From Nageia nagi (lineage: Eukaryota > Plantae > Pinophyta): a stretch of 64,000 nucleotides of DNA. Every line of letters begins with the position of its first letter. Position 1 is the first letter of the stretch. Location: positions 101,804,001-101,868,000 of the forward strand of contig JBITNC010000001.1 of the NCBI GenBank assembly GCA_050084985.1. Direction: 5' to 3'. Shown piece after piece: positions 476 through 28,984 of the stretch. The notes below the pieces were generated by a model. That model was not told where the DNA came from. It did no database searches and saw only the letters and a program-made list of their open reading frames with translations. The position numbers were made by a program, and so were the translations under genes.

Positions 476-819
476 GTAGACCAATCATAATTCAACTTTC
501 CCAACATCCTCAAGGAATGCACCAAACTAGATAAATAGTAGGAAAATAGATGCATTGAAATGGCTTGTGAATCTATTAACATTATTTCAACAAATGCAAC
601 AAACAATAATATTAGTGAAACTAGATTAATCCAACTTTGCCAACATCCTTAAAGCATCCAACACACCAAAATTTTTGCAATAAGGTTTATACATATATCA
701 AAGACGCTTTAAAATTGAATTTTTGTCAAATATTTTGGTCGTACATAAAACTAGTAGACATGTATGCAAATTATGTAAGCATATATAAAGTATATAGGAA
801 GTATTTTTCAAGATGCATG

Positions 820-2982: not shown

Positions 2983-4320
2983 TGTTAGGAGCCCCATTAA
3001 TTGTTAACGAAGAAATATAACAATTTTCCTATATAATAAAGCATAGGGGGTCATTTATGTTATGTTGGGATTACTATTTATTTCTATTTGGTATGTTTGA
3101 TTGAAAGGTTGAAACCCTACTCTCTTGTGGACAAAAACCCTATGAGAGATTTGACTCTTATGGATGGAAACCTGCAAGAGCCAACCTTGAGGATGAAAAC
3201 CCTCTTAGTCGATGAGGACTTAGGATGAAAACTCTTTGTCTTCTTAAGGTAAATCCATTTTAAGGTTTACATTGGTACATCACTTTCATATTGAGGAGCT
3301 TTTAGTGTTGATTCAGCTAACTAAGGTATTTTATCAGTATTAGCATTATCAAAGATACTTTTGTGGGCATCATTGACTAGATTTGAAGGTATTAATGTGA
3401 TCAGTAGATGGATGCTCATTTTGAGGGAAATTCGACAAGTTTTAGAAGTAATAGAGAGCATCCTTAGTTAGGCATACTCATTGAGAGGCTTTCTAATCCA
3501 TTACAATAAAAAAATATAGTTTGGGGTTGGACATGGGCCTATTGTAGAGAAAATTCTACAGATTTCCACTAGATGTCCCACCATTGTGGATATAATTGAG
3601 GTTTATTTGATTTGTGCACTATCAGGCAACATTGATATTAAGGATTATCAATTATTAATCATCATAACAATCATCCATGCTTAGATGTCCCAATATAGAG
3701 AGACTTTTTGCCTCTATTAAGATACATAAATTAGAGTTTGCAATTTATATGAAAAATTGATAAGGTTGGAGGCAAGACATCCCATCACTCTTGGGCATAT
3801 TAATTAGTAATTGCAATCAGCTAGGATGATTTATCATATTTTACTAGATGTCCCTTATTAGCAGGGTTATTTTGGAGATTTCACAATTGTTAGAAGATAG
3901 AATAGATCGCTTTAGGTGTGACATCCCTTTTTAGCAGTGTTATTTGTAATATTTACCTTGTTTGGCATCACTTATTAGAGGATCAACTTGTAAATCAAGT
4001 TCCATTAGAATTTATCTTCTAAATTTTATCAAAATTTATGTATCTATTATGATGAATTACCATTATTCATTTTACACTTTTTGATCTCTTGTAACACATT
4101 ATGAGTTATCAATATTTACAATAAATATACAATATTTATGGATTTCTCTTTCTGGGTATTGCCAAATTGGGATGTTCTAGTATTAGGCATTGTTAATTGA
4201 TGTGATTCAATGTTTATGGGTTATGATTTATGTGATTTTGATGTAAGAAACTTGGAATAGTATTGGATTTTGGATAAACTATTAGCTAAGGTTAGATAAA
4301 TCTAGAAAAGTGATATTTCA
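2983..4320 (+). mobile_element. 5' LTR of a Gypsy-type element
   Basis: TGTTAGG...TTTCA termini followed 2 nt later by the PBS TGGTATCAAA. Gag follows downstream; no 3' LTR found in the window. Confidence 0.65.
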
Positions 4321-4322
4321 AG

Positions 4323-4333
4323 TGGTATCAAAT
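4323..4333 (+). promoter_or_regulatory. Primer binding site (tRNA-iMet), degenerate
   Basis: TGGTATCAAAT vs canonical TGGTATCAGAG, directly after an LTR-terminal CA. Confidence 0.65.
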
Positions 4334-5266
4334 AATGATCTTGCCATCCTATGGGAGAAAAAGTGAAATTTTTTAGTGATTCAATGATAGTTGTGGAAGA
4401 TTTATTAGATCTAGGATTGATCTAATAGATCTTGGGCATTGCATCATTGATGCATCTTGATTGACACTTGATATTTGGCATTCTTGAGATATATTTTTCA
4501 CATACTCTTATACGTTTAGCATTTTGGGAGACTTGATACCATATGTTGAGCATATTTGGTTATTCCCTTTATTTATTGATGTTATTAAAAATCTAGATAT
4601 CTTATATAGGAGATAAAACTTGATTGTGTGCATCCCAATTTAGCAATCATTTTATTCTTCCTTAAGGCAATGCATGAAATAAGTATAGATAGTATTGAAC
4701 ATTGGCAGTTCTCATTAAAATCAATGAGAGCAAAATTAGTAATCCAAGGTAGCCTAAGGCATTGTTATTGATAGATCAGAATTTTACTTAGCAATTTGTA
4801 GAGCTAGTGAGAAGCATTGTATCATAGAATAATATGTAGTGATTGAGTATTGGCAGAATTGTAACAAATAGCATTATATTTGTAGCATTTAGAATATATT
4901 TCAAATAAGTTCAAGGCTATTATAGAATCTTCCATTCAATGCTTTGTAACCCATATATTTGATCATTATGAAGTCTAGTCCATCAGATTTTCCATTGATA
5001 TAAGGATTGCTTTATTTTGTAAAATAGTTGCAACAATGTACATTGATGTATATGGTGATAACAAAGATTAAAATTTACCATAGTTTTGACTGTTCTTGCA
5101 ATAGGAAGTTAATAAATATTTGGGGACTATTTTGGGTTTTGTAGTGTTGGCAGCCTCGTGTATTATTTTTACAGTGATTGGATTGGTAAAAATTATAATT
5201 TTTAAGGATTTTTTACTTGGTTAAAAGTTCAGCAGTGTTAGAGTTTGTAGAGGTTAACAATAGAAT

Positions 5267-6474
5267 CACTACTACATTTTAGCGATTTTGCATCATAACA
5301 TACGTCATATAATTGCATTTGATTCCATGATGCAAGATGCATCATTGTTTAGCATGTATGTATCAATCTATGCTAAACCAATTTATTTAATGTATTGGTT
5401 AACATATGGATTGACATATTGGTTGATGTATGGATTGATGTATTGATTAACATATTGGTTGATGTATGGATTTATGTATTGATTGCATCAAATAATGCAT
5501 CAAGTCAAAAAAAGAATAGAAAAAAAAGGAGTGGATCATGCACACATATCATGGCATGATTCTCTATCTATCATTGATGCATTCCCTTGATCGATGATCA
5601 ATTTTTAATAGTGGGTATGATGCCATTTATGAGTGAATGAAGGATCTTTCCCTCTATAAGGGCATTATTGGTGACGTAGGTTTGCAAGAGCCAAAGACAA
5701 GTTGAAGAACATAAATAGTAGTGTGTATATGTATTTTTTAGTAAGCAAAATGTGCATTGCATGCTTCAACCACCCATCTCAATAGTATGTGAGATGCCCA
5801 TGAAATTTGGTGGATGCCCACAAAGTTTGGTGGATGCTTGTGAAGTTTTGGATTGTATGATCGAATGACAAATCTTCTCATAGAATATGATAATTTCAGG
5901 TTACCAAAAACATGGCTTTCCTTGACATGCATTGAAACTATTTCACCAAATGTAATAACACCAACAATAGTACAACCAAATGAATTCACATTTTCTAGCA
6001 TCCTTAAAGCATGCACCAAACTGAGATATTTGCAAAAGAGTTTTTACATACATCAAAGACTCTTTAAATCGGATTTTTTTTTGATGTTGTGGTTGTGAGT
6101 TCCTTGGTATACATATATACAAAATATGGAGGTGTAGAAAAGATACATGAATTATTTGACAAGATGCATGATGCAAACAAGAAATCTTCCCATGGAATAT
6201 TATATCTAGATCAATTAACCTTTCCCCTACATCCTGTTATTTTGATGCTATAAATAATGCTTTATACATCTTGTATAATGTCACTTATTTGATCGTTCAA
6301 ACATCAATATACAATGCAATGAATGATGTTACAATTGATGAAACAAATGACATTTTATTTTATAATACTGTTAGCATCAATTGATACATCTGATTTATAC
6401 AATTTAAAAAAATAAATAAATAATACTATGGATTGATGCATGGTATGATGTAAAATTGGTTAAGTGTAGTAGTG
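5267..6474. mobile_element. Non-autonomous CACTA element carrying a PPR fragment (Pack-CACTA-like)
   Basis: Termini CACTACTACA.../...TGTAGTAGTG extend to ~40-bp imperfect TIRs. 3-bp flanks AAT/AGT; subterminal TATGGATTGATG repeats; internal PPR fragment. Confidence 0.85.
5760..6230 (+). pseudogene. PPR fragment inside the CACTA element
   Basis: FS*NMIISGYQKHGFP (~5875) and VQPNEFTFSSILKACTKL (5970-6023), followed by a SLVYIYTKYG-type motif. Confidence 0.75.
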
Positions 6475-6572
6475 AGTGTATTTATAATGTTGTTGTGGTG
6501 AGTACTTTGAGTTGATGGTAGTAAGCATTTTGATCTAAATTTTCAACTGAGTTCTCTTATTCAAAATAAAAA

Positions 6573-7145
6573 ATGGTAAACAATGGGTCACATCCTAGAA
6601 AATATGGAGAAAAGATAATGCTTGACAAACTTGAGAAGATTGATAAGGCCCAAGATAATATGAGTGAGCTTTTGAAGAGGATGCTCCAACTCCAAATAGA
6701 ATCAGCTTACAATAAAACTCCTTCAAGGGTTGCATCACCAATGGGAAGTACCTTTATGCCTTGCCAACCAACCCCATTACTCAAACCTTCCAAGCCATCA
6801 ACAAGAGGTTAATTTAGGTACTTTTTCTATTTCTTAACAAACAACATTGTTTGAAGAATACCAAGGAACACTAGAGGTTTTAGGAAGTAAGTTTCTTTTT
6901 ACAAGTTTTTAGAGTACTAGGGCAAGAAGCCCAATCACAACTCTCCTCTTAGACATGAGCAAAGGTCTCCTCCTATAGATAAGCATAAGAGGGAATTTAG
7001 GAAAAATCATATTATTGTCCACAACAAAGTAGTGTCATTTGAAGAATTATAGGGTTCAAAACTATCACCAAAGAGCAAAAATTAGTTAAGAAAAAAGCAA
7101 TTATGCTTTAGATGTCAAGAGGCTTGGACACCTAAACATGTGTGT
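6573..7145 (+). pseudogene. Ty3/Gypsy gag remnant (N-terminal coiled-coil segment plus zinc knuckle; capsid domain apparently absent)
   Basis: ORF 6573-6812 followed by stops and frameshifts, then KLSPKSKN*LRKKQLCFRCQEAWTPKHVC, a chromovirus-like CxxC-x7-HxC knuckle at 7104-7145. Confidence 0.75.
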
Positions 7146-7178
7146 GAAGATACTCAATCAGATTTGGAAAATGATCAT

Positions 7179-7356
7179 ATTAGAGTTACAATGATGAAAG
7201 TTGATGGTAATTATTTGTTAGAGTCATTTCTTTTAGTGTTTATTTCAAATAAAATAAAAATCCTCCAAAGCATAACACTATTAGAAAAATAGTCAAGGAT
7301 TTAAAAACAAAAATTGTAAACAAATTCATAGAAAGGATTATAGAAATAGAAGGGCT
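7179..7356 (+). pseudogene. OTU deubiquitinase domain, N-terminal half, in frame with the gag zinc knuckle
   Basis: IRVTMMKVDGNYL(fs)RVISFSVYFK*NKNPPKHNTIRKIVKDLKTKIVNKFIERIIEIE matches the OTU catalytic motif DGxCLFR; the Cys codon reads TAT at 7212-7214. The rest matches the ..DELR..VADEFIKRR.ETEW helix of plant OTU4-like proteins. Confidence 0.75.
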
Positions 7357-7799
7357 TGTTACCACCCATTTTTTGATCAATAATTTTTTCATCTTTTTTT
7401 TCGATTTAGGTATTTAAGAAAAGTTTTATTGTTTGGTTTAATAAACAAAAAACTCATAAAAATTGAATAATCAAAAATTTAAAAATAACAATTTTTCAAG
7501 ATCTCATCTTTTCATCACAAAAAGAGTTTGGACTGTTGGGTAGTATCTTTCACCATAGAGGCAAGCGCATATTCTGAACATTGACATCTAAATCAAATTC
7601 TATGAAACTATTAAATACCATCCTATAATTTTGATCATGAGTGGAACTCGGTCCTACTTAACTGTTGAATTACGAGAATCGAAATCTCTTTTTTGAAGCC
7701 AAGTGTTCATTCTAAACACTGAAAAATGGAATTCAGTTCTCATCATGAACTAAAAGCCAAAAAGTTCTTCATTTTCAAAACTAGAGTAAAAAATGATGA

Positions 7800-8965
7800 A
7801 TTTTAACTGTAATATTATTTCCTTTGGTCGCATTGAGTTAATAATCAACTTGAGTGTGAATAAGCGCTTTTTTTTGGTTGCATCATCTTGATTTTCAAAC
7901 TAGCATGACTTAACCATTTTCTTTGGTCACATTGACATATACCTCAACCTTGCAATGACTAAGGACTTTCTATGTGGTTGCAATATCTTACCTTCCAACT
8001 AGGTATGATAAGGGGATTTTTCTTTGGTTGCATCTACTTGTTAACCTACCCAAAGTGACTAACACAAGCCCTAATCGCATCGACTTCAACTTCTACTCAT
8101 GCCGCCTAAAGTTGCCTATTGATTTTCTCCCCACCGTCAGATCTATAGCTACAATGTTTAGATTTTTGCCACATTTCCCTTGGCACCTTTTGCACCCATA
8201 TATACCCCAACCTACCTATCATTTTCAGCATAGCACTTTTGGATCATCCCTTGTTTGAGTGTGTCTACTTCCAAGTCGGAGCAACTAGGAAATAACTAAT
8301 GGGCATGTTGAGTTAAGTGTGAAGAGAGAGCGACTAAGGCTTGGTTAGTAGTTGTGTCAAGTTGAGATGAAAGTCGAAGTGACTTAATGCTACCTTGTCC
8401 TTACTAGTTTCTTATATCGATCGAAGACCTTTCTAAGCCAGGTCCATGTGGCTTAGATTGATTGAGACCCTCTTTTCCTTTATCGCATCAAATTTTAAGC
8501 TTGATTTGAAAGCAACTAAGTTGAAATCCCTTGTTGTATTATTTGTAAGCTCTAAATGAATGCAACTAAGCCCAAACCTTTCTATCACATTAACATGAAC
8601 TTGACCTTGAAGCGACATAGTTAAGGACTACTTATCACATGGACTTAATGCTTAAGTCAAAGTAACTAAGTAAAACATTCAATTATCACATTATGTTGGA
8701 AACTTGTTCAGAGCGACTAAGACATCCCATCATCGCATCATTTTGAGTCTCAATGAAAAATGATTAAGTTTTTTTCATATTTCACATCTTATTACATGTT
8801 AACTCAAAGCAACCAATGCATTAAGTTGTTGCATATTTTATCCTTCAACTCGAAGCAACAAAAACATTACATTATCGCATCCTATTGAACTCATTCTCCA
8901 AGTGAATTGGTCAATTTTTGCTAGTCGCAACCACTTAGACTATGAACTCAATGCGACTAAAGAAA
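7800..8965. repeat. Degenerate ~50-bp tandem array of GCGACTAAG / TTGGTCGCA motifs
   Basis: TGGTYGCA-type motifs at ~7825, 7875, 7924, 7976, 8025. GCRACTAAG-type motifs at ~8512, 8562, 8612, 8661, 8713, 8953. Confidence 0.6.
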
Positions 8966-9058
8966 AATGAATAATTTTGAGAAAATGAAATTTTTCTAAA
9001 ATTATGTTTTTCATCTTGTCTTGAAATGATGGCTAATTAAATTTTTTCATTTTATAGG

Positions 9059-11280
9059 ATGATCAAGTCAAATAAAGACATGGGTGGTTATTCCCATTTT
9101 ACCAAGAGCAATTTTGTTGAATTGAAGAAAGATGGAAAAACCAAACAAAGGGCCCGTTATTATGATAGACTCAAGGATATTAGAGACCCTAAATGGAACC
9201 ATATTGATTCGATATTTATGATCAAGGAGGTCGATGGAATACTAGAAGAAGTTAAAGAAAAAGATATTCTTAATTCTTCAAGACTCTTCACAGCTGTAGT
9301 GATTCCTTTTTTAGTAAACTTTCCAGAGTTGGTACTTGAAGTTGCATAACATACAGACTTTGCAAGTCGGGTTATCAAAGATGTAAAAGGAAATATAATT
9401 GCAGATTTAACTAAGTAAGGCATAGATAAATCTACGAGTTGGTCAAACAAAGGTATCATCTTCATCTAAAAAGATGCAAACCATAAGTACGAAGAATATA
9501 ACAACAAATATAGACCTAGCGATTTTATTCGAGATTTGATGAAACTAAAAAATCATGGTTTGGCTCATCAGGCTATTATGAAAGCACAAAGATGTCTATT
9601 TCATGATACTACAAACAAAGCCATCAATTTTTTATGTAGAATTTTGGGAAAGTACACTTATATTAGATTCAAAAAAAACTTGTTTGGCTTCCTCTATAAG
9701 GTGAACAAAGGAGAAAGTATCTAATGGAGCTAGGTTATCAGTGATAAGATGATAAATCAATTGAAGGAAGTAAAAAAAATAAGGAGTTTCTTTTATATGT
9801 CCTATTTGGTTTTCCTGTTGTTGAAAGGAAAAAATTGACCTTGAGCTCATGGTATCAAAAATGTCATCTTTAACAAAAAGGCTAAAATTTACATGGCCTA
9901 TCCAAAATTTCATAAGGTCAAAGAATGGACCTACATTCAAATGAGGATTGATGAATGGGAATATGCAATCATCAAAGAATTAAAAAGGGCTCAGCATGTT
10001 CCTAGTATTTCCATTGAGGTAGTTGATTTTTTGAAGAGGTTTGTTGATTTTTACCTCGAATAATTTGATAATTCTTATACGAGGGTTTTTGGTGCAAATG
10101 TATCACCGCTCAAATTACTGTGTTATCTTAGAAATAGGATGGTTTTCCTTGAATTTGTGAGACAAGCTTTCTATTTACATGAAAAGTTTTCTAAGGAGAA
10201 GAAAGAGGTACCCATCACGATGCATATTACTCTTTCTTGATATTGTTGTAATAATTGGTTGGAAGTAGAAACAATCAAGTGTGAGATTGAAGGTTACAAT
10301 TTTGAAAGCCACATATTGAAGATGCATTATGATCCAATTGGTGTAGTTGACAGATTTTGCCAAAAATTTCACACAAATTATAAACATCACTCTCTCGGCA
10401 ATCTTGAAATATATAGAAATGTTTATTCAGAGTTACAAATGCAAAGAATCTTTGAACAACTAGCACATGATGAGAAAGAAAGAAAGGATTATACAAAGAT
10501 AAAAGTTGTAGAATTGAGCAAGATTTCACTAGAGATCCTAGTTTCAATCAATTTGGCTCAATGCAAGAATTCGATGTATTGAAGAACATTAATGCATCTT
10601 TTTCAAACATTTTGACACCTAGATTCATAGATTCATAAGTTGTTGAACACCCCAAATCCCACTTTGAAAGTGGATAACGTAGTCATGATGTCAATCCAAG
10701 TAGAGATCCTTCTTCTAGCAGTAGCTCTTTAGAGAGCTCTAATGATTCTGACAGCGATGACTAGTCAAAATATGTAGGTAGTAATAATAGGTCAAGAAGT
10801 CATAATGAGAGTGAAGAAGAATCTGATGAAGATGAGGGGAGGTACGAATAACAAACTAAAGAAATTTTTGAAGAGTATCAAGACACTGGCCCGACTACAG
10901 ACACTCATACTGAAGGAGAAGAAGACTTCATAAATAATACAGACTCTGAAAAAGAGGGTCAAATCAAATAAGATGTCTTTATCCCTACAAGGGTTTTTTT
11001 TGGCATGGATTTGATTACTACTTATTCTTCTTCCACCTCGGAAGAGTCATAGCAAGAGGATGTAGCTTTGGACGTCCCCATGCAACAAGCTATGAAGGGC
11101 TCTACATAAACTACAAAACACCCAACCATGAGGTCAGAGGAAAAGAAAGGCTTTACTCCTCACAAAAGTTTTGGCTTACAAAAATCTTCATTTAAGCAGT
11201 CGTATAGAGTAATCAGAGGGGATGGAGATAGAAATGATGATGATGAAAATGAAAAAAGGAGAAAAAAGAAAATAAGATGA
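9059..11280 (+). pseudogene. Decayed retrotransposon accessory ORF with acidic C-terminal tail
   Basis: Collinear + ORF pieces 9059-9349, 9536-9724 and 10259-10582, with motifs FPELVLEVA and MVFLEFVRQ and a D/E/S-rich tail. No RT, integrase or transposase motifs recognised. Confidence 0.55.
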
Positions 11281-11381
11281 ACACAATAAACAGATTATCA
11301 CAATTGATAATACCACCACCCTTGATCAACTCAGCTCAGAGAACCTCCTAAGCTATAGGAAATGGTGGCTATAAGGTAAAT

Positions 11382-13741
11382 TGTGGGTGGATCATTAACA
11401 ATGGAGTGAAGTTCTTGCTCTAAGTAACATAAAAGGGGTCAAATTCCAAACAACACAAGTCTTATATGCAAATCATAAACTATTGCACATCAAATCTCAC
11501 TCAATGATCACTTTAGATAGTATTTAACAAATTCTTTCATCCACTTCAACACAAGGTTTATGAAATGTACTAAGTAAGCTTGATCAATACAATATAGGAA
11601 TATAATTCAATCAAGGATTCAATAATGCATTCAACAAATGTTCATGATTCCATTAATGAGAGCATTCACCATTCAATTGCTTGAGATAATACCACATTCA
11701 CAAATGGAGCAACTTGTTTATTTGGAAGTAAAATTTAAGTCTCTCATAAGTTTAAAATGTTTAATCCCCTATAAAATAAGCCCAAATGGGATATAAATAG
11801 TTTTTGTAGCAACCCCATGCATTACCCTAACCCTAATGCAAATTATGAGAAAAATAAAAGTGGTCCAATGAAAATTCACCACATGGCATTATAAGATTTA
11901 TTCTAGCACTTATGGGAGCAAATCCTCATCCGTCACAAGGCTTAACCAAATTTAAAAAGTATTTGAAATCCACATTTAAAATAAATTGCAATAATATAAT
12001 TAAATTAAATTATTGCAACTGCAACAAGAAGTTGGTATGCTCCTCTAATACTCAAGGATTCGTCCATCTTCCTTACTTCTGCAACACTTGATATTGAAAC
12101 ACTCCTACTAGCAATTGGCGAGGATATTCTAAAAGCCTACATTTATTACTAGAACATATTGGGACCTTGTGATGCAATGCCTAAGCTATGTGAGACCTAG
12201 GCTAACCAACTTCAGGATGTGTGCCCTCTTGAAATTGCATGTTTGGCCACCACAAACTGGACGTGGGGGTTCTGGAGCACTTCCAAGCCTAGCACATGCC
12301 TAGAAAAGATAAGATTTTATCTTTCTAGAGCATGCACTAGCCTTGGGGATAAATGCTTTCTACTTGTTGGTGTTACTCACTCCCCTGCTTGTCCATTTTG
12401 ACCTTGAAGCTTACCCCGATACCTAAACTTGTTTGATTTTTACTCTTTCTAGTGCCCAAGCTTGTCATATTTGATCATTGTGCTTGACTCGAACACCTCC
12501 AAAGCTTGGTCCATGGTTCAAAAAGATAAGATTTTATCTTTTTGAATTGTGCACTCAACCTTCCAGCTCTTCCAATTTGAGCACATGCTCCAGAAAGATA
12601 ATATTTTATCTTTATGAGGCATGAGCTGGCTTGCAAATGCCTAGATTTGGTAAGTTCCAGGTTCCTGCTCTCAATACTTTTCTAGATTTTCATGATTTGA
12701 ACATCCTGAAGCCTCCCTAAGTCTGGCACATGGTTCAAAAAGTCAATATTTTGTCTTTTAAAATCATGCGCCAACCCCTCTAATCCTATTGAAGCTAGTT
12801 TCAAACTTCGAGGCTCCATGCCTTAGCCAAATTTCACCTTTCAAAAGAAATGGATGCCTCTTTTCCATGAGCGCATGCCCTCAAAAGATAAGATTTTATC
12901 CTTTTGAGGCATGCGCTAGCCCCATGGATGCTTGAAGTTCACTTTCTCTTCCTCGAACTCAAATTGTGCAACCGTCCAGTTTGAGCGTATGGTTCAAAAA
13001 GATAAGATTTTATCTTTTGAAATCATGCACCAACCTTAGAGTGTCTTTAACTTATATTTTTCGTACTATGTATCAATCTAAGATGCTCCTTGACCCAAGT
13101 GCATGCTTAAAAAAGATAAGATTGTGTCTTTTGGAGGCATGCATTGGGCCTCAAAGTGGCCAAGTTTGGTTTTCTTATACTTGATTCTAATTTGGATGAC
13201 CCTTTGACTCGAGCGCATGTCTAGAAAGATAAGATTTTTTCTTTTAGAGGCATGCATTGGGATTCAATGTAGCCCAGTTTGACTAGATTTAGCTTCCACT
13301 CAACTTGGATCCCATGACTTACCTAAGGCCAACTTTTGGTCTTTCAAACTTAGCCACATTTGGAATTTCATATTTGGTTCAATATGAATAAGACTATACG
13401 AATGATAAGACTTAGGCTTGGGACAACCTAACATGGTAAACAGGTCATAGAAAACTTCTCGAGTCGGATGATACAAATACATGACACTACATGGACACGA
13501 GTTGTTAAGGGTCCCCAAAATCATTGGATTTTGGGACATGTTATGTTAGTCATAACACTCGTAACTTGGATAACTCGAGCAAGTTTAAGACAACTGAGTT
13601 ACAAACATTAAGCAATTGCTTACTTTTCAAGAATTAGTGGAGCAAATATTTAATCTAAGTATGGGAAAGATTGCAACAAAAATAACATTAGTGTTAACAC
13701 AATCTATTAAACACTAAGCAAACACATCGAGGACCACCTCA
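11382..13741. mobile_element. Probable solo LTR (~2.36 kb) nested in the 7357-13807 element
   Basis: Imperfect inverted termini TGTGGGTGGATC...GGACCACCTCA with TAAA-containing flanks. Non-coding; contains the palindrome array. Confidence 0.5.
12290..13258. repeat. Array of eight ~48-bp palindromes
   Basis: Consensus AGCGCATGCCTCAAAAGATAA-GATT-TTATCTTTTGAGGCATGCGCT, starting at 12290, 12507, 12579, 12724, 12869, 12983, 13097 and 13211. Confidence 0.9.
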
Positions 13742-13807
13742 TTAAAAGGAGGATCATAGATCCTTTACTATCCCCTTTTTCTCCTTAATAAGAAAAAAGG
13801 GTTAACA

Positions 13808-14023
13808 TGGGCTATAGAAGGAGATTTTGATGTGTATGCTCAGCTTATTAGAGAGCCACATGTATGGGGTGGTGAACTTGAATTGTTAATGGCCTCACAT
13901 ATAATCAAAATGCCCATAGTAGTTCACTTGTATGATGAAGAGTATGATAAGTTTCCGTCCATAGTAGAATATGGGCAAGAGTATAAATAAGAGAATGTCG
14001 TTAGAGTTTTGTATGATGACCAT
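13808..14023 (+). pseudogene. OTU deubiquitinase domain, C-terminal half (plant OTU4-like)
   Basis: WAIEGDFDVYAQLIREPHVWGGELELLMASHIIKMPIVVHLYDEEYDKFPSIVEYGQEYK*ENVVRVLYDDH contains the OTU WGG..E motif and the EYGQEY/RVLY motifs. One stop at 13988; the catalytic GHYD segment is missing. Confidence 0.88.
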
Positions 14024-14585
14024 AGGAAAAAGATGAAGAACAAAAATATTCAAATACATCATCCCTTCTTGAGCAAAAACTTGAAGACAATGAACCATCA
14101 AGTGAAAGAAGTAAAGCAAAAAATGTTGAGTGCAAATCATATCTAATTATTGCAACTTCAAGCACAAATAATGAAGGCTTCAAAAGAGGATATATAGCTG
14201 AAATAGGTGAGAAAAATTCCAATTTATATGACAACCCAACCATTCATGAAAATTATGAAAAATAATGATGGGACAAGATGGAAGAGCTGGGTTTTCAAAT
14301 CTAACTCATTGAAGAAAGCACATATGATAATTTCAATATGAAAGGTTTGAAGAATGATGATGAAAATGAAAATAAAACTTTATACTTAAGATTGCATTGT
14401 TAAAGCAGACGCACGTCTTTAGAGGCAAGATATCGAGCATCTTCTAGAACTTAATTTTGATCCAAAGGGAGTCATGTGACCATTCATTTCATATGTACTC
14501 GACAAGATCTATCCTATGATGAAGTTATTTCATCATTTAGAGATCACATTTGGTCTAAATTACTAAAATTAAGTTTGAGCAACCT

Positions 14586-14720
14586 GTATCTTCAATAACA
14601 AGTCGTGCATCTTCAATAACAAGTCGTGCATCTTCAATAACAAGTCATGCATCTTCAATAACAAGTCAAGCGTCTTCAGTCACAAGTCAAGCGTCTTCAG
14701 TCACAAATCAAGCATGTTCA
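14586..14720 (+). repeat. 21-bp minisatellite, ~6 copies
   Basis: (GCATCTTCAATAACAAGTCGT)n drifting to GCGTCTTCAGTCACAAGTCAA. Confidence 0.9.
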
Positions 14721-14929
14721 TCTTCTCCTCTTACAAATATATTTATTAAAAATATCGCCATTTTTTAACATCACAGTTCCTAAAAAATTAAAATATCGTC
14801 ATTATGTCTACATCGGTTCGAGATTGAATAGCTACGATTTCGAAATCAATTCGCCACTATTTTATTTATTTTGGTTCACCAAAATTCCTTACGCATAACC
14901 CTACGATCGATGATCAATTAACCTACTTG

Positions 14930-15125: not shown

Positions 15126-17224
15126 AGTGTGTTTGACATCGCATGAATGAAAATGAATATTAACATTGTTTAAGGAAAGATATATTTATCCAGTACGTTG
15201 CAGCTGACTCTTTGACTTTAGTTGATAAACCCTTTCTTATATATCAAAAATTGTGAGGTCATTTTGTTTTCCGGTAATAATTGCCGGAATAGTTATGTTG
15301 GTAAACCTGGAGTTTATCAATATTATGGAATGTTCAACAAAAAAAAAGCAAAAAAAAATCTAAAGTGTCCGAATACACAAGATTTGAACTTGTACCATTT
15401 ATTTAAAAATTCAGATTTAATTTTGTATACATAAGATCAATATCTAAATGTTGATATACCCGTCGAGTTTATACATGCCGGACAAAAAAGGGAACCACGA
15501 GATATTTGCTGAAAAAAGACTGATATGTGATACGAGTTTATCAACTGCAGTGAACAAGTCAATCACAACGTACGTTTCCATTATTTAGCCAGAATTTACC
15601 AGGCGAAAATTGCAAGAAGGAAGTTGCGTTAATTAGTAGGTGCCAAATGCATAACTAGGAAATCAAATAGGTAGTAGGTGTATCCATTTGTTAATATTTT
15701 GAATGGTTCCGTCTAAACATGATTGTGAGAGCTCAGAAAGAGGGGGTGTGCAAAAGAGGTTGTGCCCAATAATGAAAGGGCAGTCAGAATGTCATGTATT
15801 ATCCTAGTTAAACTTGCACACTATTTGATGATAAACCATCTGAAGAGGTATCCAAATAGGAAGCGTTTCATTTGTGTGGAAGCTAGGCTCTTTAGCCGTC
15901 CTACATCTCTATAAATATGTTTTCTCTTTCTTTTGAATAAGCAAGTCAAAATGCAAAATCGAAAGCAATGGAGTTACTTGGCTATCTCGCCAATTAGACA
16001 AGTCGAATGCAGAGTAAGAAATAAATGAAAATGTGTATTAGACCATATAATCCTCTTAGTTGTAAGGGTAAATTAATTGCAAGTACTGCGTAGAGGAAAT
16101 TTCATCTAGAATAAATTAAAACAACGTAATGAGCTACTTTCTCTCTTAATAACTAAAATATAGATTTTTAAATGCACATGGAGTACCCAAACTCCTGAAT
16201 CTTAATAGAAAGAAGCAATCTAGAATACTATATTATTTATAACTCTGCTCTACACATACACCTAATATGAGGTGCGGTGTTATGAAGAGAAACTACTAAT
16301 GCAATGGAATGTAAGTCTAGATGAAAAAGATTTTTCTTCATAACCGTAGTAATAGTAGCTCTTAACCATATTCAATTGATGAAGGCATTTCCTTAGGAAA
16401 TTAAGTACTATTTTGTCTTTATATAAGTTTGCATGAAAGTCCGGGGGTGAAACGGCTGGAGAGCTGTTATTTGTTAGGGAGCAGAGAACTTTATTATAGT
16501 CTTAAATCAAGTCATTCCAACATCTTCCGTAAATATCAACACCCACCTGGCGTGTGGGATGGATTTGGCCAGAAGTTTTCAACTAATAATAATGTTGTGA
16601 AGGGATATGATTCTGTTACTGTGAGTAGATCAGGTTAATGTACACAGTCTATGCTGCAACTCAAAGTAATTCTCATCACATGGATGCTAACAAGTCTTCA
16701 AGTATGATTGGTATCTGATTTCACACAAAAGAATAAGTGACCATCTTCTGCTGATATGTCATTTTGTATTACGATGGAGTCATGATAACAATTGCCTATT
16801 GATAGAGAGATGGTCTTTGTGGAGGCTGCTAGAGATATAGTGGCAACTGTTCCAGCATTCAACCAGGATTCAGCTGTCTTTTGAAGAATTATCTTTCTAA
16901 ATGGTAAAATGAAACTGCATGACTGTGACTCCTAAGTAATCAGTGCATTGAGTGATCTGCTAGGTATTTCATCAGTCAAAGTTAGAAGGTTTTTGTGTTG
17001 TGTGCATCTGTATGTAAAATAGTCATACAACATTAGTATGACGTGTAAAACAATTGTACGATGTCACAACTCAAAAAAACTCATTCGCCATCCATCTAAC
17101 AAACAACTCACAAGCATAAACTCTGAACCTCATAAGATATCTATTTCTAAAAGCAATTATCCAATGGTGATATTCCAACCTCAACATACAAAATACGTGC
17201 TCATGAGATATAATGATTACTGTC

Positions 17225-18150
17225 TATGCATAGAATGGTTTTGTCATTAAGCATTGAGATTTTTAAAGTAAATATCTCAAAGAGATACAATCTTTTGGAA
17301 GGCAACGATCACAGGATATGCATAGGATTCTTATGGTTTAAAGATCCTTAGTGGTAGTTTCAGAAAATGCAATTAGATAGATAGATAGATGTTAATGTTC
17401 TTTTAAAGATGTTAATTTGTAAGATCTATCAAAATTTGTTCAGAAGTAAATATATATTAAATAAATAAAAAACATTAACCAAATACAATGCACAGAAAGA
17501 ATACTTTTAAGGACAATTGTTGAATTGACTGATATGATTTCTTTAGATGCATGTGATTGTGATAGTAACTCTCATTAACATGTATGAAAAATGTAGCAGC
17601 ATCATGAAATTCCAATTAGAATTGAGTTCTAAGGAAAATGCTCACGTCTTTGTACAAGTAAGCACTAAAATGGAGTATCAAATGGAATCGACTCTCATGA
17701 AAAAATGGAATTGAACTATCTATTTACAAAAGCAATTCACCAATGGTGAAAGCTCTCTCGTATGGTTGGAATATGCTCAAACCTTGCTTACTGTTTGATA
17801 AAATAACAGACAGGTTCATCTTCTCATGTAAAACAATAATTACAGACTATGCACAGAATGGGCTTATGTGAAACTTTTAAAGTAAATAACTATAAAGAGA
17901 TACAATCTCATGGAATGCAATGATCAAAGGATATTCACGGAACAGGCATTGTTTAGAGGCCCTCTTAAGTGTTTTAAAAAATGCAATTGAATGGTCTCAC
18001 CCGAGACTCAATAACCACCACAAGTATTCTGGCTGATTGTACAACTGTTGAAGCTTTAAATAGAGCATGAACATTGGACAAAGAATTAGATACAGGTTTC
18101 TTTTAAATGTAATTGTGATAAAAACTGTGATGGTCAGGTAGGAAAAATAT
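17225..18150 (+). pseudogene. PLS-class PPR pseudogene fragment
   Basis: RDTIFWKATITGYA (~17282); RDTISWNAMIKGYSRNRHCLEAL..MQLNGLTRDSITTTSILADC (~17897-18040). Confidence 0.8.
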
Positions 18151-18356
18151 ACGAACCTTAAAATAAAGTGTCAAAAGGATTTGAGTTTTAAGAAAAAAAT
18201 TTAACATGTGTATCTGTAAAAGGGTAAAGGCCCTTTTCAAAATCCTTCTTGTTTAATTCAACTAAAGAAAAAGGCAGAGCAGTGAGAACTGAGAATGGGT
18301 AAAATTCCAGACTGAAGTGGAAACTAGCGACATTGGAAGCATCTTCTCCAACTTGC

Positions 18357-18428
18357 TATCAGAGACAGGTTTCGATCCTGTGACCTGTGGGTTATGGGCC
18401 CACCACGCTTCCGCTGCGCCACTCTGAT
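18357..18428 (-). tRNA. tRNA-iMet-CAT: Initiator tRNA-Met (CAT), A49-U65 T-stem variant
   Basis: ATCAGAGTGGCGCAGCGGAAGCGTGGTGGGCCCATAACCCACAGGTCACAGGATCGAAACCTGTCTCTGATA. Has A1-U72, the AUCG T-loop and G-C anticodon-stem pairs; intronless. Confidence 0.97.
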
Positions 18429-18503
18429 GTTGAATATTATCTACCGATCTAAGCAAAATTGTGCAAGTACACAAAATGAAGCGGAGCACAGTGCAAAAGA
18501 AAA

Positions 18504-18528
18504 TGCGCCGAGCGTGGATCGAACACGC

Positions 18529-18571
<43 letters not shown>

Positions 18572-18576
18572 CCCGC
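18504..18576 (-). tRNA. tRNA-Phe-GAA: tRNA-Phe (GAA) with altered acceptor stem, possibly impaired
   Basis: GCGGGGATAGCTCAGTTGGGAGAGCGTCAGACTGAAGATCTGAAGGTCGCGTGTTCGATCCACGCTCGGCGCA. The 3' strand is TCGGCGC vs TCACCGC in the other two copies; TTTTCTTTT terminator follows. Confidence 0.9.
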
Positions 18577-20535
18577 ATGTATTTTATTTGCCAAATTAGT
18601 CGTTTGTCACCTGTGCCATGTGCTGCTGGGTTCCAACCCAAGTGTACATGTGCAAGTTCTTGGATCGTCTAATACCCCGACAAATAGACATTAAAATACA
18701 TGTTTAGATTTATGCCATTCTTTCTTGTTTTGATTTATGTTAAGATATTTATACCAAAAAAATCATTAGACACCAAATTTCAATTGAAATTAGCTATTGA
18801 AAAATAAATTTAGGAGTGCACAATTGACATAAAGGACAATAGTGCTATTTAGGGATTTGAAGTAGAGGGACAATAATATTATTTAGAAATCATTTTTATT
18901 TTTTACAATAAAAATTAGTCATATAAACATATTAAAATAATTTAAATTAAATATTTAAAGGGAAGTTGAAAGATAATTGTGATCCATGTATTAGGTAAGA
19001 AAGGTGATCTTAAGATTATTTCTATGATTCAAATTAAAGGTAAAAAGGAGAAAATAACTAAGGTAAAGAAACAACACACCAAAGGAATAAAGACGAGGGT
19101 TCAAGGTGAACATATGAATAGAGGCAACAATATAACTAACCTAATTAACAAAAACATTGATTATGAGATGGAGGTGGATATACTAACTACCAACTTGAAT
19201 AGTTTTATACGACCAAAGATGTATCAGATGAAGATGCAAGTGAAGCAAATGGAGCAACACAAGGGAAGAGTGAATAAAGAATTAGGAACATAATGATGGA
19301 AGAGGTTGGGGAACCACTTATAGCCACCTTATCTCTAGCATAAGGTAGAGGTAGAAGGCCTAAAGGAGCTCTTATCTAACCACCAATAGAAATTCCTTTA
19401 TACAAAAGAATGCTTGTTGAAGTAATTATCTAAAAAGTCAATCAAATCATGTGTTCGACATCATTGTAGAGAACCCAAAGTTGACAAATTTGATGAAAAA
19501 GTTGGTGTATAACAAGCTCTTCAAGCACCACTATAAACATATGGTATTCAAATTTTTTAGGGATCCTAGGATGATTATTCTACATATGGGGGAAAACTTG
19601 GGGCAAACTAGTAGGATTGATTCCTAAAAGCAAGGGTACATGTAGTTGAAAAAAGAATGAAGCTAAGTTATTTGGGGCCCTGATGGACTTATTTTGTAAC
19701 AAAGCTATAAACGTCAAAGTAGCTTTTTGAGATTTAGGTCTCCTATTACTACATAGTTTTTATTTACTCTTGAAACAGAAAAATATAGTCATAGTAGAAA
19801 GTCTACTTTAGTCTATTAGAGATTGCTTAAAATACCTACATAACATAATGAAGCACTTCAAAATTTGTAATTTTTTTGTGAAGTTGTAATAGAAACATGA
19901 AAGTTTATAACTTGTAAGGTTTTTTTTTAAGATCATATAAAACTTCAAAATTGTTGCTAGAGATTGCTTAAATCACATACAGAGTAGAATGAAGCACTTC
20001 AAAACATGTAGGTTTTAAGGTTGTAATAGAAACACACAAATTGATAACTTGTAAGGTTTTTAATAAAACTCCAAACTTTTTATTATTAAAAATTTATCCT
20101 ATTTATAAAAAAAATCCCAAGCAACACATCAAGGTTTTAAACCTAATATAAAGAATCCCTTTCACATGCTTCAAAAAATGGGTGTTACAATAGAAGACCA
20201 TGAGTGATTAGCCTTGAATCTCTTACAAACTTGAGTTAAAACTTAGTTTCAATTTTTTTTCTCATTTTTCTTCAATTCATAATTATACACGTTATTAACT
20301 ATCCAACCATCCAAAGTGCATGTCTTAAATGAAACTACTGTTGACTCCTTACTTTTAAGTAAATCTTACTCAAACCATAATTTCTAATAAAATCGTAAAT
20401 ATATTTAACCATATAATCTAAAGAAGAGATTTTAAATCAATCTTACCAAACTCATCAAAATTCAAAACATCTATTACAATCTCTTCAAACCCTCTCTTTA
20501 GGAGAGTTCAAATCAATCTCTTCAAATTCTTCCAT

Positions 20536-23235: not shown

Positions 23236-23834
23236 GCATAATAATATAAAGGCATAAGTATTATTCCAAAAACACAAACCTATAAAACAGAAATATTCAT
23301 CAAAATACATTGATAAAATAAATAATTTTTATACAAATAAATCCAACCTCAACTTCCTCTTATTATAATTTCACTCCAAACATTTGAGAGAGTTAAAACA
23401 AACGTGAGCAAAGACCCTTATTATGGTCTAGAGGCCTCTATGTGTTTTCAAAAATGCAATTGAATGGTTTCAGAACAGACTCTTTGTATTCCGGCTGATT
23501 GTACAACTTTTGAACCTTTAAAATGGAGTATGAAGATTGGACAAAGAATTAGATACAGGTTTCTTTTAAATGTAATTGTGATAACAACTGTGATTGTCAG
23601 GTTTGAAAAATATAGGAACCTTAAAATAAAGAATCAAAAGGATTTGAGTTTAAAGAAGAAATGTTAACATATCTCTGTAAAAAGGTAAGGGCCCTTTCAA
23701 AATCCTCCTTGCTTAAGGTGTTGAAATTGCAGATTAAAGTGGAAATTAAACCCAACTTTGGTGTTAGCTTTAGACAACCCTGCACTGCTGCTTCCTGCGA
23801 AAGAGGAAAAATGAAAGTAACTTCTCCGACTTCT

Positions 23835-23906
23835 TGTCAGAGCCAGGTTTCGATCATGGGACCTGTGGGTTATGGGCCCACCACGCTTCCGCTACGCCGC
23901 TCTGAT
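23835..23906 (-). tRNA. tRNA-iMet-CAT: Initiator tRNA-Met, degenerate copy (probable pseudogene)
   Basis: ATCAGAGCGGCGTAGCGGAAGCGTGGTGGGCCCATAACCCACAGGTCCCATGATCGAAACCTGGCTCTGACA. Changes: U8>C in the A box, C13>U, G52>U T-stem mismatch, and A1:C72 mismatch. Confidence 0.85.
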
Positions 23907-24000
23907 GGCCAATTAATGCATGATGTATGGGTCTAAACTAAAACTCTACAACCACACAAACTGAAGCAGAACAGATAGCAGCTTCGAGTATAGAATAAAA

Positions 24001-24025
24001 TGCGGTGAGCGTGGATCGAACACGC

Positions 24026-24068
<43 letters not shown>

Positions 24069-24073
24069 CCCGC
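24001..24073 (-). tRNA. tRNA-Phe-GAA: tRNA-Phe (GAA), canonical plant sequence
   Basis: GCGGGGATAGCTCAGTTGGGAGAGCGTCAGACTGAAGATCTGAAGGTCGCGTGTTCGATCCACGCTCACCGCA followed by TTTT. Confidence 0.98.
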
Positions 24074-24233
24074 ATGATTTTTGTCTTGCCATATTAGTCC
24101 TTCGTCACCTGTGCCATGTGCTGCTGGGTTTAATTCAACTAAAGAAAAAGGCAGAGCAGTGAGAACTGAGAATGGGTAAAATTCCAGACTGAAGTGGAAA
24201 CTAGCGATAATGGAAGCATCTTCTCCGACTTGC

Positions 24234-24305
24234 TATCAGAGACAGGTTTCGATCCTGTGACCTGTGGGTTATGGGCCCACCACGCTTCCGCTGCGCCACT
24301 CTGAT
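24234..24305 (-). tRNA. tRNA-iMet-CAT: Initiator tRNA-Met (CAT), A49-U65 variant, identical to 18357-18428
   Basis: Same 72-nt sequence as the 18357 copy. Confidence 0.97.
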
Positions 24306-27300: not shown

Positions 27301-27734
27301 TTTTGAATAGCATAGCTTAGGAAATTTTATAGATCATAAATTCACACCAAATGAAAAACATACTTATAATGGAAGAAAGATGAGTTATAACATAAATGTT
27401 TTATATGAAAATTAAGAGAAAAATATTAAATTATAAGACAAAGATATAGAAATTATTGGATAAGTATGAAAAAAGATAGTTGGATGCAAAGAATAGTCGC
27501 ACGTGGTTAGTACGAGGTGTAAAATAATTATGCAAGTGTAACCTTGTATGATGTGTAAAATAGTTGTACTATGCTATAACTATTTTAACTTTCACACTAT
27601 TCCATCTACTTGACAAAAAACTCAAAAGCATAAACACTTAACCGCACAAGTTATCCATTTACAAAAGCAATTATCCCATGGTGATATTCCAACCTCAACA
27701 TACAAAATACGTGCTCATGAGATATAATGATTAT

Positions 27735-28660
27735 TGTATATGCATAGAATGGGTTTGTGATGTAGAATTTAGACTTTTAAAGTAAATACTTCAAAGAGAT
27801 ACAATCTTTTGGAAGGCAATGATCACAAGACATGCACATAACTAATACAGTTTAGAGATCCTTTGTGTTTTCAGAAAATGCAATTAAATAATTAGATATA
27901 TAGATGTTAATGTTCTTTTAAACTTCTTGGTTTATAAGATCTATCAAAATTTGTTCAGAAGTAAACACACATCAATTAAGTATTTAAATGATTGTTTTTT
28001 ATATAAAGAAAACATTGAACAAATGAGAAAGAATGCTTTGAAGAAAATTTGACTGATATGGTTTCTTTCAATGTGATTGTCATAGTAACTCTCATGGACA
28101 TGTATGAAAAATGTAGGAGCTTCACGAAATTCCAATTAAAATTGACTTCTAAAGAAAATGCTCACATCTTTGTAAAAGTAAGTACTAAAATGGAGTATCA
28201 AATGGAATTGGTTCTCATGAAAAATGGAATTGATTCATCTATTTAAAAAAGCAATTAACCAATGTTGAAAGCTCTCCCATGTGGTTGGACTATATGCTCA
28301 AATCTTGAGTACTGTTTTGATAAAATAACAAACAGGTTTATGTTCTCATGGAAAACAATGATTACAGACTATGCAAAGAATGGGCTTCTTTGATGAAGCA
28401 TTGAAACTTTTAAAGAATATAACTAAAAAGAGATACAATCTCATAGAATGCAATGATCAAAGTACATGCACGGAACTGGCATGGTTAAGAGGCCCTCTAA
28501 GTGTTTTCACAAATGCAATTGAATGGTTTCCAAATTCAGACCAGATTCAGTAACTGCCACAGGCATTCTGGTTGATTGTACAACTTTTGAAGCTTTAAAA
28601 TGGAGTATGAACATTGGACAAAGAATTAGATACAGGTTTCTTTTAAATGTAATTGTGATA
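27735..28660 (+). pseudogene. PLS-class PPR pseudogene fragment (paralog of 17225-18150)
   Basis: RDTIFWKAMITRHA, VTLMDMYEKC, GFFDEALKL and RDTIS*NAMIK motifs. Confidence 0.8.
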
Positions 28661-28731
28661 ATTGTGAGAATGGTTGAAATTTCAGATTGAAGGGTAAACT
28701 ACCCTGCACTGCTACTTCCACAGAAGGAGAG

Positions 28732-28742
28732 AAAAAAGAAAA
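28732..28742 (-). terminator. Pol III oligo-T terminator of tRNA-iMet 28766-28837
   Basis: TTTTCTTTTTT on the minus strand, 23 nt after the discriminator base. Confidence 0.75.
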
Positions 28743-28765
28743 TGGAAGCATCTTCTCCGACTTGC

Positions 28766-28916: not shown

Positions 28917-28941
28917 TGCGGTGAGCGTGGATCGAACACGC

Positions 28942-28984
<43 letters not shown>

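What the first reader, a model, noticed from the sequence alone, without database searches (positions are those of the whole stretch)
6573..14023. Gypsy-type element encoding a Gag zinc knuckle-OTU deubiquitinase fusion, hidden by a nested insertion
Seen: downstream of an LTR and iMet PBS (2983-4333), the gag knuckle CFRCQEAWTPKHVC (7104-7145) continues in the same frame, after ~19 codons, into DGNYL-R (7203). This is the OTU catalytic motif DGxCLFR with TGT>TAT. Removing 7357-13807 joins ...KFIERIIEIE to WAIEGDFDVY..PHVWGGELELLMASH..EYGQEY..RVLY, giving a nearly complete OTU domain resembling plant OTU4-type enzymes (Arabidopsis At3g57810 family, from memory). It lies where the aspartic protease normally follows gag; no capsid domain, pol or 3' LTR is visible. 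Known: OTU domains occur in RNA viruses (tymo-, nairo- and arteriviruses, acting as deubiquitinases) and in some Helitrons. I do not know of a Gag-OTU fusion in plant LTR elements. Inference: the family captured a host OTU, perhaps to protect its particle or proteins from ubiquitin-dependent clearance. This copy is dead (stops, a frameshift, Cys lost, His segment missing).
Basis: partly seen in the sequence, partly recalled or inferred. Interest (0 to 1): 0.9.

Follow-up and report, generated by a model that had tools for sequence, protein, structure and literature searches.

The report
Dead Gag-knuckle/OTU4 chimeric retrocopy
A long-dead, intron-less copy of a plant OTU4 deubiquitinase domain sits in frame behind a retrotransposon-style zinc-knuckle motif and is split by a later 6.45-kb insertion; it looks like a one-off gene-fragment capture, not a proven new kind of retrotransposon.

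Summary
The core observation holds. The piece 13760-13987 hits Pfam OTU above threshold. Its best relatives in 1.84 billion proteins are plant OTU4/At3g57810-type deubiquitinases, at 50-58% identity. Four stop-free pieces (7176-7262, 7259-7351, 13808-13987, 13991-14023) map colinearly onto that domain. The break at 7357-13807 is a non-coding insertion with TGTTA...TAACA ends and a GGGCT direct repeat on both sides. A CX2CX7HXC motif of the plant gypsy-Gag type lies 19 codons upstream, in the same open frame. At least four inferred host introns are absent, so the copy came from RNA.

The proposed LTR has no partner in the window, and its PBS match is at chance level. No capsid, protease or pol domain was detected. 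A PPR pseudogene fragment lies between the proposed LTR and the ORF. No relative sharing the junction was found anywhere I could search. Loss of host-invariant residues, including most of the catalytic motif, fits neutral decay.

The best reading is a single chimeric retrocopy of the maize Bs1 kind.

The parts
6573..6809 (+). Start of the decayed ORF: an ATG followed by 79 open codons with a coiled-coil-like sequence. It is in the same frame as the knuckle. It has no recognised domain.
   Evidence: no credible Pfam hit (one sub-threshold AHH match, 14.5 bits against a cut-off of 22.3); no homologue.
6810..7103 (+). Decayed stretch between the ORF start and the knuckle, with six in-frame stops, four of them clustered in 6810-6920. 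It is far too short to hold a Gag capsid domain.
   Evidence: 6 stops in 239 codons against about 17 expected from the background rate.
7104..7145 (+). Zinc-knuckle-like motif CFRCQEAWTPKHVC. It has CX2CX4-x-X4C spacing, with Thr at the canonical His position and a His two residues before the last Cys. From my own knowledge, this is the pattern of many plant Ty3/gypsy Gag proteins.
   Evidence: The regex occurs once in the window and in 0 of 200 shuffles. No Pfam zf-CCHC hit.
7176..7262 (+). First part of the OTU domain, holding the catalytic motif region. DGNY is at 7203-7214, with Tyr (TAT, 7212-7214) where the catalytic Cys belongs. A frameshift follows in the A-rich run near 7251-7265.
   Evidence: It is placed correctly by hmmalign, but it is too decayed to score alone.
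7259..7351 (+). Second part of the OTU domain (the PPKHN...FIERIIEIE region), in a frame shifted relative to the first part.
   Evidence: Local phmmer search restricted to the 150 retrieved relatives: P0056 gives E 2.8e-6. The piece aligns just upstream of the C-terminal piece and covers host-HMM positions 44-82.
7352..7356 (+). Left copy of the GGGCT direct repeat, the target-site duplication of the nested insertion.
7357..13807 (.). Nested non-coding insertion of 6,451 bp with TGTTA...TAACA termini. It has no internal LTR pair and no protein domain on either strand. Sub-repeats with a palindromic core lie at 12282-13281. It is a solo LTR, a non-autonomous LTR-type element, or a composite.
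13809..13813 (+). Right copy of the GGGCT direct repeat.
13808..13987 (+). Third part of the OTU domain (the WAIEGDF...VWGGELELLMASH...EYGQEY region). It ends at the in-frame stop at 13988-13990.
   Evidence: PF02338 38.9 bits. phmmer best E 8.5e-18, with 223 hits. Host HMM E 2.3e-26.
13991..14023 (+). Last recognisable part of the OTU domain (the VVRVLYDD region). The segment that should hold the catalytic His (GHYD) is not found after it.
2983..4334 (+). It is not shown to belong to the unit.
   Evidence: No second copy in the window. The PBS match is 9 of 12 bases, which is chance level. A PPR fragment lies between it and 6573.

Best explanation
This is the relic of a single chimeric reverse-transcription product. 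A short piece of an LTR-retrotransposon Gag, its C-terminal zinc-knuckle region, is joined in frame to an intron-less cDNA fragment. That fragment covers most of the catalytic domain of the host's OTU4-type deubiquitinase gene.

The join was most likely made while a retroelement RNA and an OTU4 mRNA, or a read-through spliced transcript of both, were copied by reverse transcriptase. This is the route that produced maize Bs1. The product once formed one open reading frame of roughly 330 codons. It then decayed neutrally: Cys became Tyr, and it gained stops, one frameshift and the loss of the His segment. It was later split by a 6.45-kb LTR-type insertion.

Shown here: the OTU4 homology, the colinearity of the pieces, the lack of host introns, the nature of the insertion, and the dead state. 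Inferred: the Gag origin of the knuckle and the template-switch or splice route. Nothing indicates that the OTU domain served a retroelement.
For: OTU identity and parentage.

The four pieces are colinear on the host domain. The distance from DG to the EIE/W junction is 48 residues, against 47 in host proteins.

Host intron sites were read from genomic-ORF fragments and from intron-retaining or exon-skipping models. Examples are P0127, P0138, P0037, P0071, P0007, P0017 and P0062. The window is continuous across at least four of these sites, so the copy is RNA-derived.

The knuckle motif is not a chance product. It lies in the same 68-codon open piece as the OTU start.

Stop density is well below background across the whole unit: 7 stops in about 345 codons, at a background of 0.070 per codon. 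This suggests one former ORF.

The insertion has TG...CA ends and a 5-bp direct repeat.

One third of host-invariant residues are lost, including most of the catalytic motif, as expected for neutral decay.

No relative with the junction was found.

There is a precedent: Bs1 has gag fused to transduced host gene fragments, and template switching during reverse transcription can create chimeric retroelements (PMC13317346).
Against: No LTRs bound the unit, so retroelement mediation is inferred only from the knuckle, which no HMM recognises.

A PPR fragment directly upstream on the same strand could point to a mosaic made by another kind of transposon.

The break lies within 0-3 nt of a host intron site, which is a 2-9% coincidence under the insertion model.

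The absence of relatives is weak evidence, because no plant genome DNA could be searched.
Confidence: 0.42

Rival explanations
1. A Ty3/gypsy family acquired a host OTU domain between Gag and protease and used it as a deubiquitinase. This locus is one dead, truncated copy of that family.
For: The fusion is in frame, and stop density is low across the junction. The OTU sits where the protease region would follow the knuckle. Directly after the OTU homology, a 79-codon open piece (14026-14262) has an acidic stretch and the sequence LIIATSSTNN. By eye, this recalls the LIDSGSTHNF protease motif of plant gypsy elements. Other transposon classes carry conserved OTU or ULP1 domains (PMC2836005, PMC13317346).
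Against: No LTR pair, capsid, protease, RT or integrase was found. The protease-like piece gives no Pfam hit even at E up to 10. None of the best 150 OTU relatives carries a knuckle or a TE domain. The junction piece has no relatives. The catalytic motif is among the worst-kept parts. No paper in the library reports OTU in a retrotransposon polyprotein.
Confidence: 0.15
2. An ordinary LINE-made processed pseudogene of OTU4, truncated at its 5' end, landed by chance inside an old Gag remnant, in the same orientation and frame.
For: The copy is intron-less. LINE fragments are present in the window: Exo_endo_phos, RVT_1 and zf-RVT. The chance of the same strand and frame is about 1 in 6, which is not small.
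Against: No poly(A) tract or flanking duplication was found around the OTU part. Homology stops inside the coding region, before the His segment and the stop codon, rather than running into a 3' UTR. Low stop density runs through the junction.
Confidence: 0.18
3. A decayed DNA-level duplicate of an OTU4 paralogue, in which 7357-13807 is a retained and expanded host intron. The upstream knuckle would be an unrelated neighbouring fragment.
For: The break falls at the host intron that interrupts the Trp codon before FIEGDF. A pyrimidine-rich tract followed by AG lies just before the right boundary. HMMER alignments extend 7-9 residues upstream of 13808.
Against: At least four other host intron sites are continuous in the window. 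Under this model the donor would read GC and the acceptor TG. The GGGCT repeat and the TGTTA/TAACA termini fit an insertion much better. The knuckle shares one open frame with the OTU start.
Confidence: 0.1
4. A mosaic of gene fragments (PPR, Gag-like, OTU4) gathered by a DNA transposon such as a Helitron or Pack-MULE.
For: Fragments of three unrelated genes lie in the same orientation within 8 kb once the insertion is discounted.
Against: DNA-level capture normally keeps introns, and this copy lacks them. No terminal inverted repeats or Helitron ends were identified. The PPR fragments may simply be an older resident pseudogene.
Confidence: 0.07

Closest known systems
Plant OTU4 deubiquitinases (Arabidopsis At3g57810 type)
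   Same: This is the sequence family of the OTU part. The best hits are so named, at 50-63% identity over 57-68 residues, and the pieces are colinear with the whole catalytic domain.
   Different: The window copy lacks the long N-terminal region and lacks the host introns. It has Tyr at the catalytic Cys and no His segment. It also carries stops, a frameshift and a 6.45-kb insertion. It is a pseudogene fragment, not an OTU4 gene.
Maize Bs1 LTR retroelement (gag plus transduced host gene fragments in one hybrid ORF)
   Same: A retroelement Gag-type sequence is fused in frame to an RNA-derived host gene fragment, with no pol (PMC13317346).
   Different: Bs1 has LTRs, is a defined element and is expressed. 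Here no LTRs, no other copy and no intact ORF are seen.
Ginger1 DNA transposons and animal Helitrons/Helentrons with OTU domains
   Same: A transposable element carries a PF02338 OTU domain (PMC2836005; PMC4067079).
   Different: Those are animal DNA transposons in which OTU is fused to the transposase or Rep/Hel protein and recurs across multi-copy families (Ginger1: PMC2836005). Here the context is a plant Gag-like piece in a single dead copy, and the OTU is a recent offshoot of host OTU4.
Kaonashi / KI-MULE ULP1 capture in plants
   Same: A plant transposon acquired a host cysteine isopeptidase domain of the ubiquitin-like pathway (PMC13317346).
   Different: That case involves the ULP1 (C48) domain in a Mutator-like DNA transposon, and it is conserved across eudicots. 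Here the domain is OTU, the copy is RNA-derived, and there is no evidence of conservation.
Dispersed OTU4 fragments in Camellia gene models
   Same: At least six Camellia models on different contigs end in the same OTU4 fragment. It is joined across the Trp-codon intron site and includes the Pro-to-Leu change in GGE[P/L]ELL that the window also has.
   Different: They are only 63% identical to the window, cover only about 47 residues, have no knuckle, and are fused to varied unrelated N-termini. Their relation to the window element is unknown.

Membership tests
OTU cysteine protease domain (PF02338) | Profile match above Pfam's gathering score | tested here: met
   Piece 13760-13987 scores 38.9 bits against a cut-off of 23.3, on profile positions 40-105 of 128.
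OTU cysteine protease domain (PF02338) | Catalytic Cys in the D-G-x-C motif | tested here: not met
   The motif reads DGNY at 7203-7214, with Tyr (TAT) at the Cys position. The Asp is present.
OTU cysteine protease domain (PF02338) | Catalytic His (GHYD segment) near the C-terminus | tested here: not met
   Homology ends at VLYDD(H) near 14023. No frame shows the segment.
Plant OTU4 (At3g57810) subfamily | Closest relatives are OTU4 proteins rather than other OTU clades | tested here: met
   The top representatives are named OTU4 / At3g57810-like in Daucus, Eucalyptus and Helianthus, with unnamed relatives in other plants.
Ty3/gypsy LTR retrotransposon | Pair of LTRs with a target-site duplication around the unit | tested here: not met
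   Self-comparison of the window finds no partner for 2983-4320 and no repeat flanking the unit.
Ty3/gypsy LTR retrotransposon | Primer-binding site next to the 5' LTR | tested here: inconclusive
   The site at 4323-4334 matches the iMet PBS at 9 of 12 bases. There are 37 such sites in the window against 37.3 expected.
Ty3/gypsy LTR retrotransposon | Gag capsid domain (Retrotrans_gag) upstream of the knuckle | tested here: not met
   No Pfam gag hit in the 6570-7289 pieces or in any + strand piece of at least 45 aa in 1-24000. Only about 177 codons lie between the ATG and the knuckle.
Ty3/gypsy LTR retrotransposon | CCHC zinc knuckle at the Gag C-terminus | tested here: inconclusive
   The CX2CX7HXC motif is present and is not due to chance, but no Pfam zf-CCHC model hits it. 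The match to the plant gypsy pattern rests on my own knowledge.
Ty3/gypsy LTR retrotransposon | Protease, RT, RNase H and integrase downstream | tested here: not met
   No such Pfam hit downstream until a weak RT fragment at about 22.3 kb, which lies inside an unrelated tRNA-repeat unit.
Processed (RNA-derived) gene copy | Absence of the parent gene's introns | tested here: met
   Five host intron sites were inferred from fragment and mis-spliced models. The window is continuous across four of them, and the fifth coincides with the insertion. This is indirect, because no host genomic DNA could be fetched.
Processed (RNA-derived) gene copy | Poly(A) tract and flanking target-site duplication | tested here: not met
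   No A-run longer than 6 within 750 bp downstream, and no shared k-mer of 12 or more between the flanks. Decay could have erased them.
Multi-copy TE family carrying the fusion | Other copies sharing the knuckle-OTU junction | not testable with these tools
   There is no second copy in the window, and the protein, metagenome and viral collections gave nothing.

The most novel reading that the evidence does not exclude
A lineage of plant LTR retrotransposons really did carry a host-derived OTU4 deubiquitinase domain in its Gag or polyprotein, between the knuckle and the protease. This locus would then be a decayed, truncated member. It would be the first retrotransposon-borne deubiquitinase, parallel to the OTU domains of Ginger1 and Helitron elements and of RNA viruses.
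Probability: 0.13. Interest if true: 0.7.

Novelty: new member of a known kind. Interest (0 to 1): 0.3.

Why it matters
As it stands, this is one more example of how reverse transcription shuffles host gene fragments into retroelement sequence in plants. It is useful for annotation: the locus should not be called an OTU gene or a gypsy element. It is not surprising.

It would matter if the same junction recurs in LTR-bounded copies with an intact catalytic triad. That would show a retrotransposon borrowing a deubiquitinase, and it would make testable the idea that such elements counter ubiquitin-dependent control.

Tried and rejected
- Pfam on every stop-free piece of at least 45-48 aa on both strands of the whole window, plus targeted sets. 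Near the finding, only OTU, weak PPR and weak RT hits appeared. No gag, protease or knuckle model hit.
- Word-index protein searches with the junction piece and the N-terminal piece found nothing. The OTU piece found one host-type fragment.
- Metagenome and viral contig scans with the junction and OTU pieces found no relatives.
Intron sites were inferred from protein fragments instead.
- A search for an LTR pair inside the 6.45-kb block and for partners of the proposed LTR found none.
- A search for a poly(A) tract or TSD around the whole unit found none.
- tblastn of all pieces against the window found no second copy.
- The protease-like LIIATSSTNN motif at about 14140-14170 is rejected as evidence, because it has no HMM support.
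- I considered reading 7357-13807 as a retained intron. I rejected this as less likely than an insertion, because of the GGGCT repeat, the TG...CA termini and the non-canonical splice sites that the intron reading would require.
- Long OTU hits (P0137, P0035 and others) were checked for TE domains; none was found.

Full report
**What is in the sequence**

The window is AT-rich (27-39% GC) and has only one ORF longer than 130 codons. It is plant-like and full of decayed repeats.

In frame 0 of the + strand, an ATG at 6573 opens 79 codons. A messy stretch with six stops follows. Then comes a 68-codon open piece (7086-7289) that holds CFRCQEAWTPKHVC at 7104-7145. Nineteen codons later it holds DGNY at 7203-7214.

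A frameshift lies in an A-rich run near 7251-7265. It leads into the piece 7253-7414.

After 13807 the frame reads WAIEGDF...VWGGELELLMASH...EYGQEY. There is a stop at 13988, then ENVVRVLYDDH.

**OTU identity**

The piece 13760-13987 scores 38.9 bits on PF02338, against a cut-off of 23.3. Searched against 1.84 billion representative proteins, it has 223 hits at E up to 1e-3. The best is 8.5e-18, at 50-58% identity.

The named hits are 'OVARIAN TUMOR DOMAIN-containing deubiquitinating enzyme 4 / At3g57810-like', from Daucus, Eucalyptus and Helianthus. Unnamed relatives come from Striga, Eruca and Solanum.

The piece 7253-7414 matches the same proteins immediately upstream. P0056 gives E 2.8e-6 in the set of 150, with 15 of 30 residues identical.

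I built an HMM from 64 host domains. It places the four pieces 7176-7262, 7259-7351, 13808-13987 and 13991-14023 colinearly along the domain. The distance from DG to the junction is 48 residues, against 47 in hosts.

The first piece is too decayed to score on its own. I kept the pieces apart throughout.

**The break**

The block 7357-13807 (6,451 bp) begins TGTTACC and ends GGTTAACA. GGGCT flanks it on both sides, at 7352-7356 and 13809-13813. The colinear coding ends are 7351 and 13808.

The block has no internal LTR pair and no Pfam domain on either strand. It has sub-repeats with a palindromic core at 12282-13281. I read it as a non-coding LTR-type insertion: a solo LTR, a non-autonomous element, or a composite.

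**Host introns**

Intron sites were read instead from genomic-ORF fragments and from mis-spliced or exon-skipping models among the hits:

- after HGKK, and after CLRS (P0017);
- after ELRA[RK] (P0007);
- inside the Trp codon before FIEGDF (P0127, P0138, P0037, P0071);
- after SHVL[KQ] (P0138, P0142, P0114);
- after TIA, before EYGQEY (P0062).

The window is continuous across four of the five sites that lie inside the copied region, so the copy is RNA-derived.

The fifth site coincides with the insertion to within 0-3 nt. Under the insertion model that is a 2-9% coincidence, and I could not explain it further.

The retained-intron alternative would need a GC donor and a TG acceptor. It would also leave the repeat and the termini unexplained.

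**The Gag-like part and the proposed LTR**

The knuckle pattern occurs once in six frames of the window. The specific form occurred in 0 of 200 shuffles, and the general CX2CX7HXC form at 0.075 per shuffle.

Its resemblance to plant gypsy Gag knuckles (LCFxCxExWxPxHxC) rests on my own knowledge. No Pfam knuckle or gag model hits it. Only about 177 codons precede it, which is too few for a capsid domain.

The proposed LTR at 2983-4320 has no partner in the window. Its PBS is at chance level, whereas perfect iMet PBS sites exist elsewhere in the window. PPR fragments at 5844-6250 lie between it and 6573.

**Downstream**

No protease, RT or integrase follows. A weak RT fragment at about 22.3 kb lies inside a repeated tRNA unit and is unrelated.

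The piece 14026-14262 has an acidic stretch and LIIATSSTNN. By eye this recalls the gypsy protease motif, but it gives no Pfam hit at E up to 10. I do not count it as evidence.

No poly(A) tract or flanking duplication surrounds the unit.

**Search for a family**

- None of the best 150 OTU relatives has a knuckle or a TE domain.
- The junction and N-terminal pieces have no relatives in the 5.8-billion index.
- The OTU piece finds one host-type fragment, at 63% identity.
- The metagenome and viral scans are empty.
- There is no second copy in the window.

These blanks are weak evidence. The word index sees only short proteins for short queries, and no plant genome DNA could be searched.

**Selection or decay**

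Stops are fewer than background across the unit: 6 in 239 codons, 0 in 34 and 1 in 72, against 0.070 per codon. A single ORF therefore once existed.

The window keeps 24 of 36 host-invariant residues, and only 3 of 7 in GDGRCLF. A rough estimate from that retention gives about 16% nucleotide divergence and 2-3 expected stops in the OTU part. One stop and one frameshift are seen, which is compatible with neutral decay since capture.

There is no positive sign that the OTU was maintained for a function.

**Literature**

OTU domains are known in Ginger1 DNA transposons and animal Helitrons (PMC2836005) and in Helentrons (PMC4067079). Among plant transposons, capture of ULP1 by MULEs and the gag-plus-host-fragment ORF of maize Bs1 are established (PMC13317346). 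I found no paper reporting OTU in a retrotransposon polyprotein.

**Verdict**

The unit is best read as a single, dead, chimeric retrocopy of the Bs1 kind that was later split by an insertion. The Gag-OTU family hypothesis remains possible, at about 0.13, but it has no support from the data within reach.

The step of building a family consensus with restored residues and assaying it was referred and not taken.

Noticed in passing
window 18357-18577, 23835-24305, 28766-28990 (- strand): There are three tRNA-Met(CAT) plus tRNA-Phe(GAA) pairs and one weaker tRNA-like hit. They lie in segmentally repeated units about 5 kb apart (17099-18735 is similar to 27613-29154, and 23771-24514 to 28695-29226, at 80-96% identity). 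This looks like a nuclear tRNA gene cluster or a tRNA-carrying repeat.
   Followed up: partly
window 39386-46103 (+): A Ty1/copia element. Its LTRs at 39386-39891 and 45599-46103 are 89% identical, and a one-mismatch iMet PBS lies at 39889-39900. It holds copia gag (41070-41297), Pol_BBD (41807-42217) and integrase/SH3 pieces (42229-43253). A related LTR fragment in reverse orientation lies at 827-1326.
   Followed up: yes
window 48234-54968 (-): A direct repeat pair at 48234-48891 and 54336-54968 (86.5% identical) has a perfect iMet PBS at 54323-54334 on the minus strand. This is a second LTR element. Its coding content was not mapped.
   Followed up: no
window 489-724 and 5844-6250 (+): PPR-repeat pseudogene fragments on the same strand as the finding, 74-76% alike. 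They may be two parts of one old PPR pseudogene separated by insertions.
   Followed up: partly
window 7352 / 13808 versus host OTU4 proteins: The 6.45-kb insertion sits within 0-3 nt of the host intron that interrupts the Trp codon before FIEGDF. A pyrimidine tract followed by AG lies at about 13765-13792. This is either a coincidence or a hint of a more complex history.
   Followed up: partly
proteins P0070, P0073, P0076, P0077, P0085, P0103 (Camellia lanceoleosa and C. sinensis): Six or more Camellia gene models on different contigs end in the same 47-residue OTU4 fragment, fused to unrelated N-termini. This suggests that an OTU4 fragment has been dispersed in Camellia, possibly by a transposon.
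   Followed up: partly
window 12282-13281: An array of diverged sub-repeats (spacing about 113-290 bp), each with the palindromic core AAAGATAAGATTTTATCTTT, lies inside the nested insertion.
   Followed up: no
window 14564-14731: A tandem repeat with a 21-bp period (about 7-8 units) lies about 540 bp downstream of the OTU remnant.
   Followed up: no
window 24000-64000 (-): LINE-type RT pieces (RVT_1 at E 3.3e-7, zf-RVT at E 6.5e-8) lie on the minus strand. An Exo_endo_phos piece lies on the minus strand of 1-24000. Their exact positions were not mapped.
   Followed up: no
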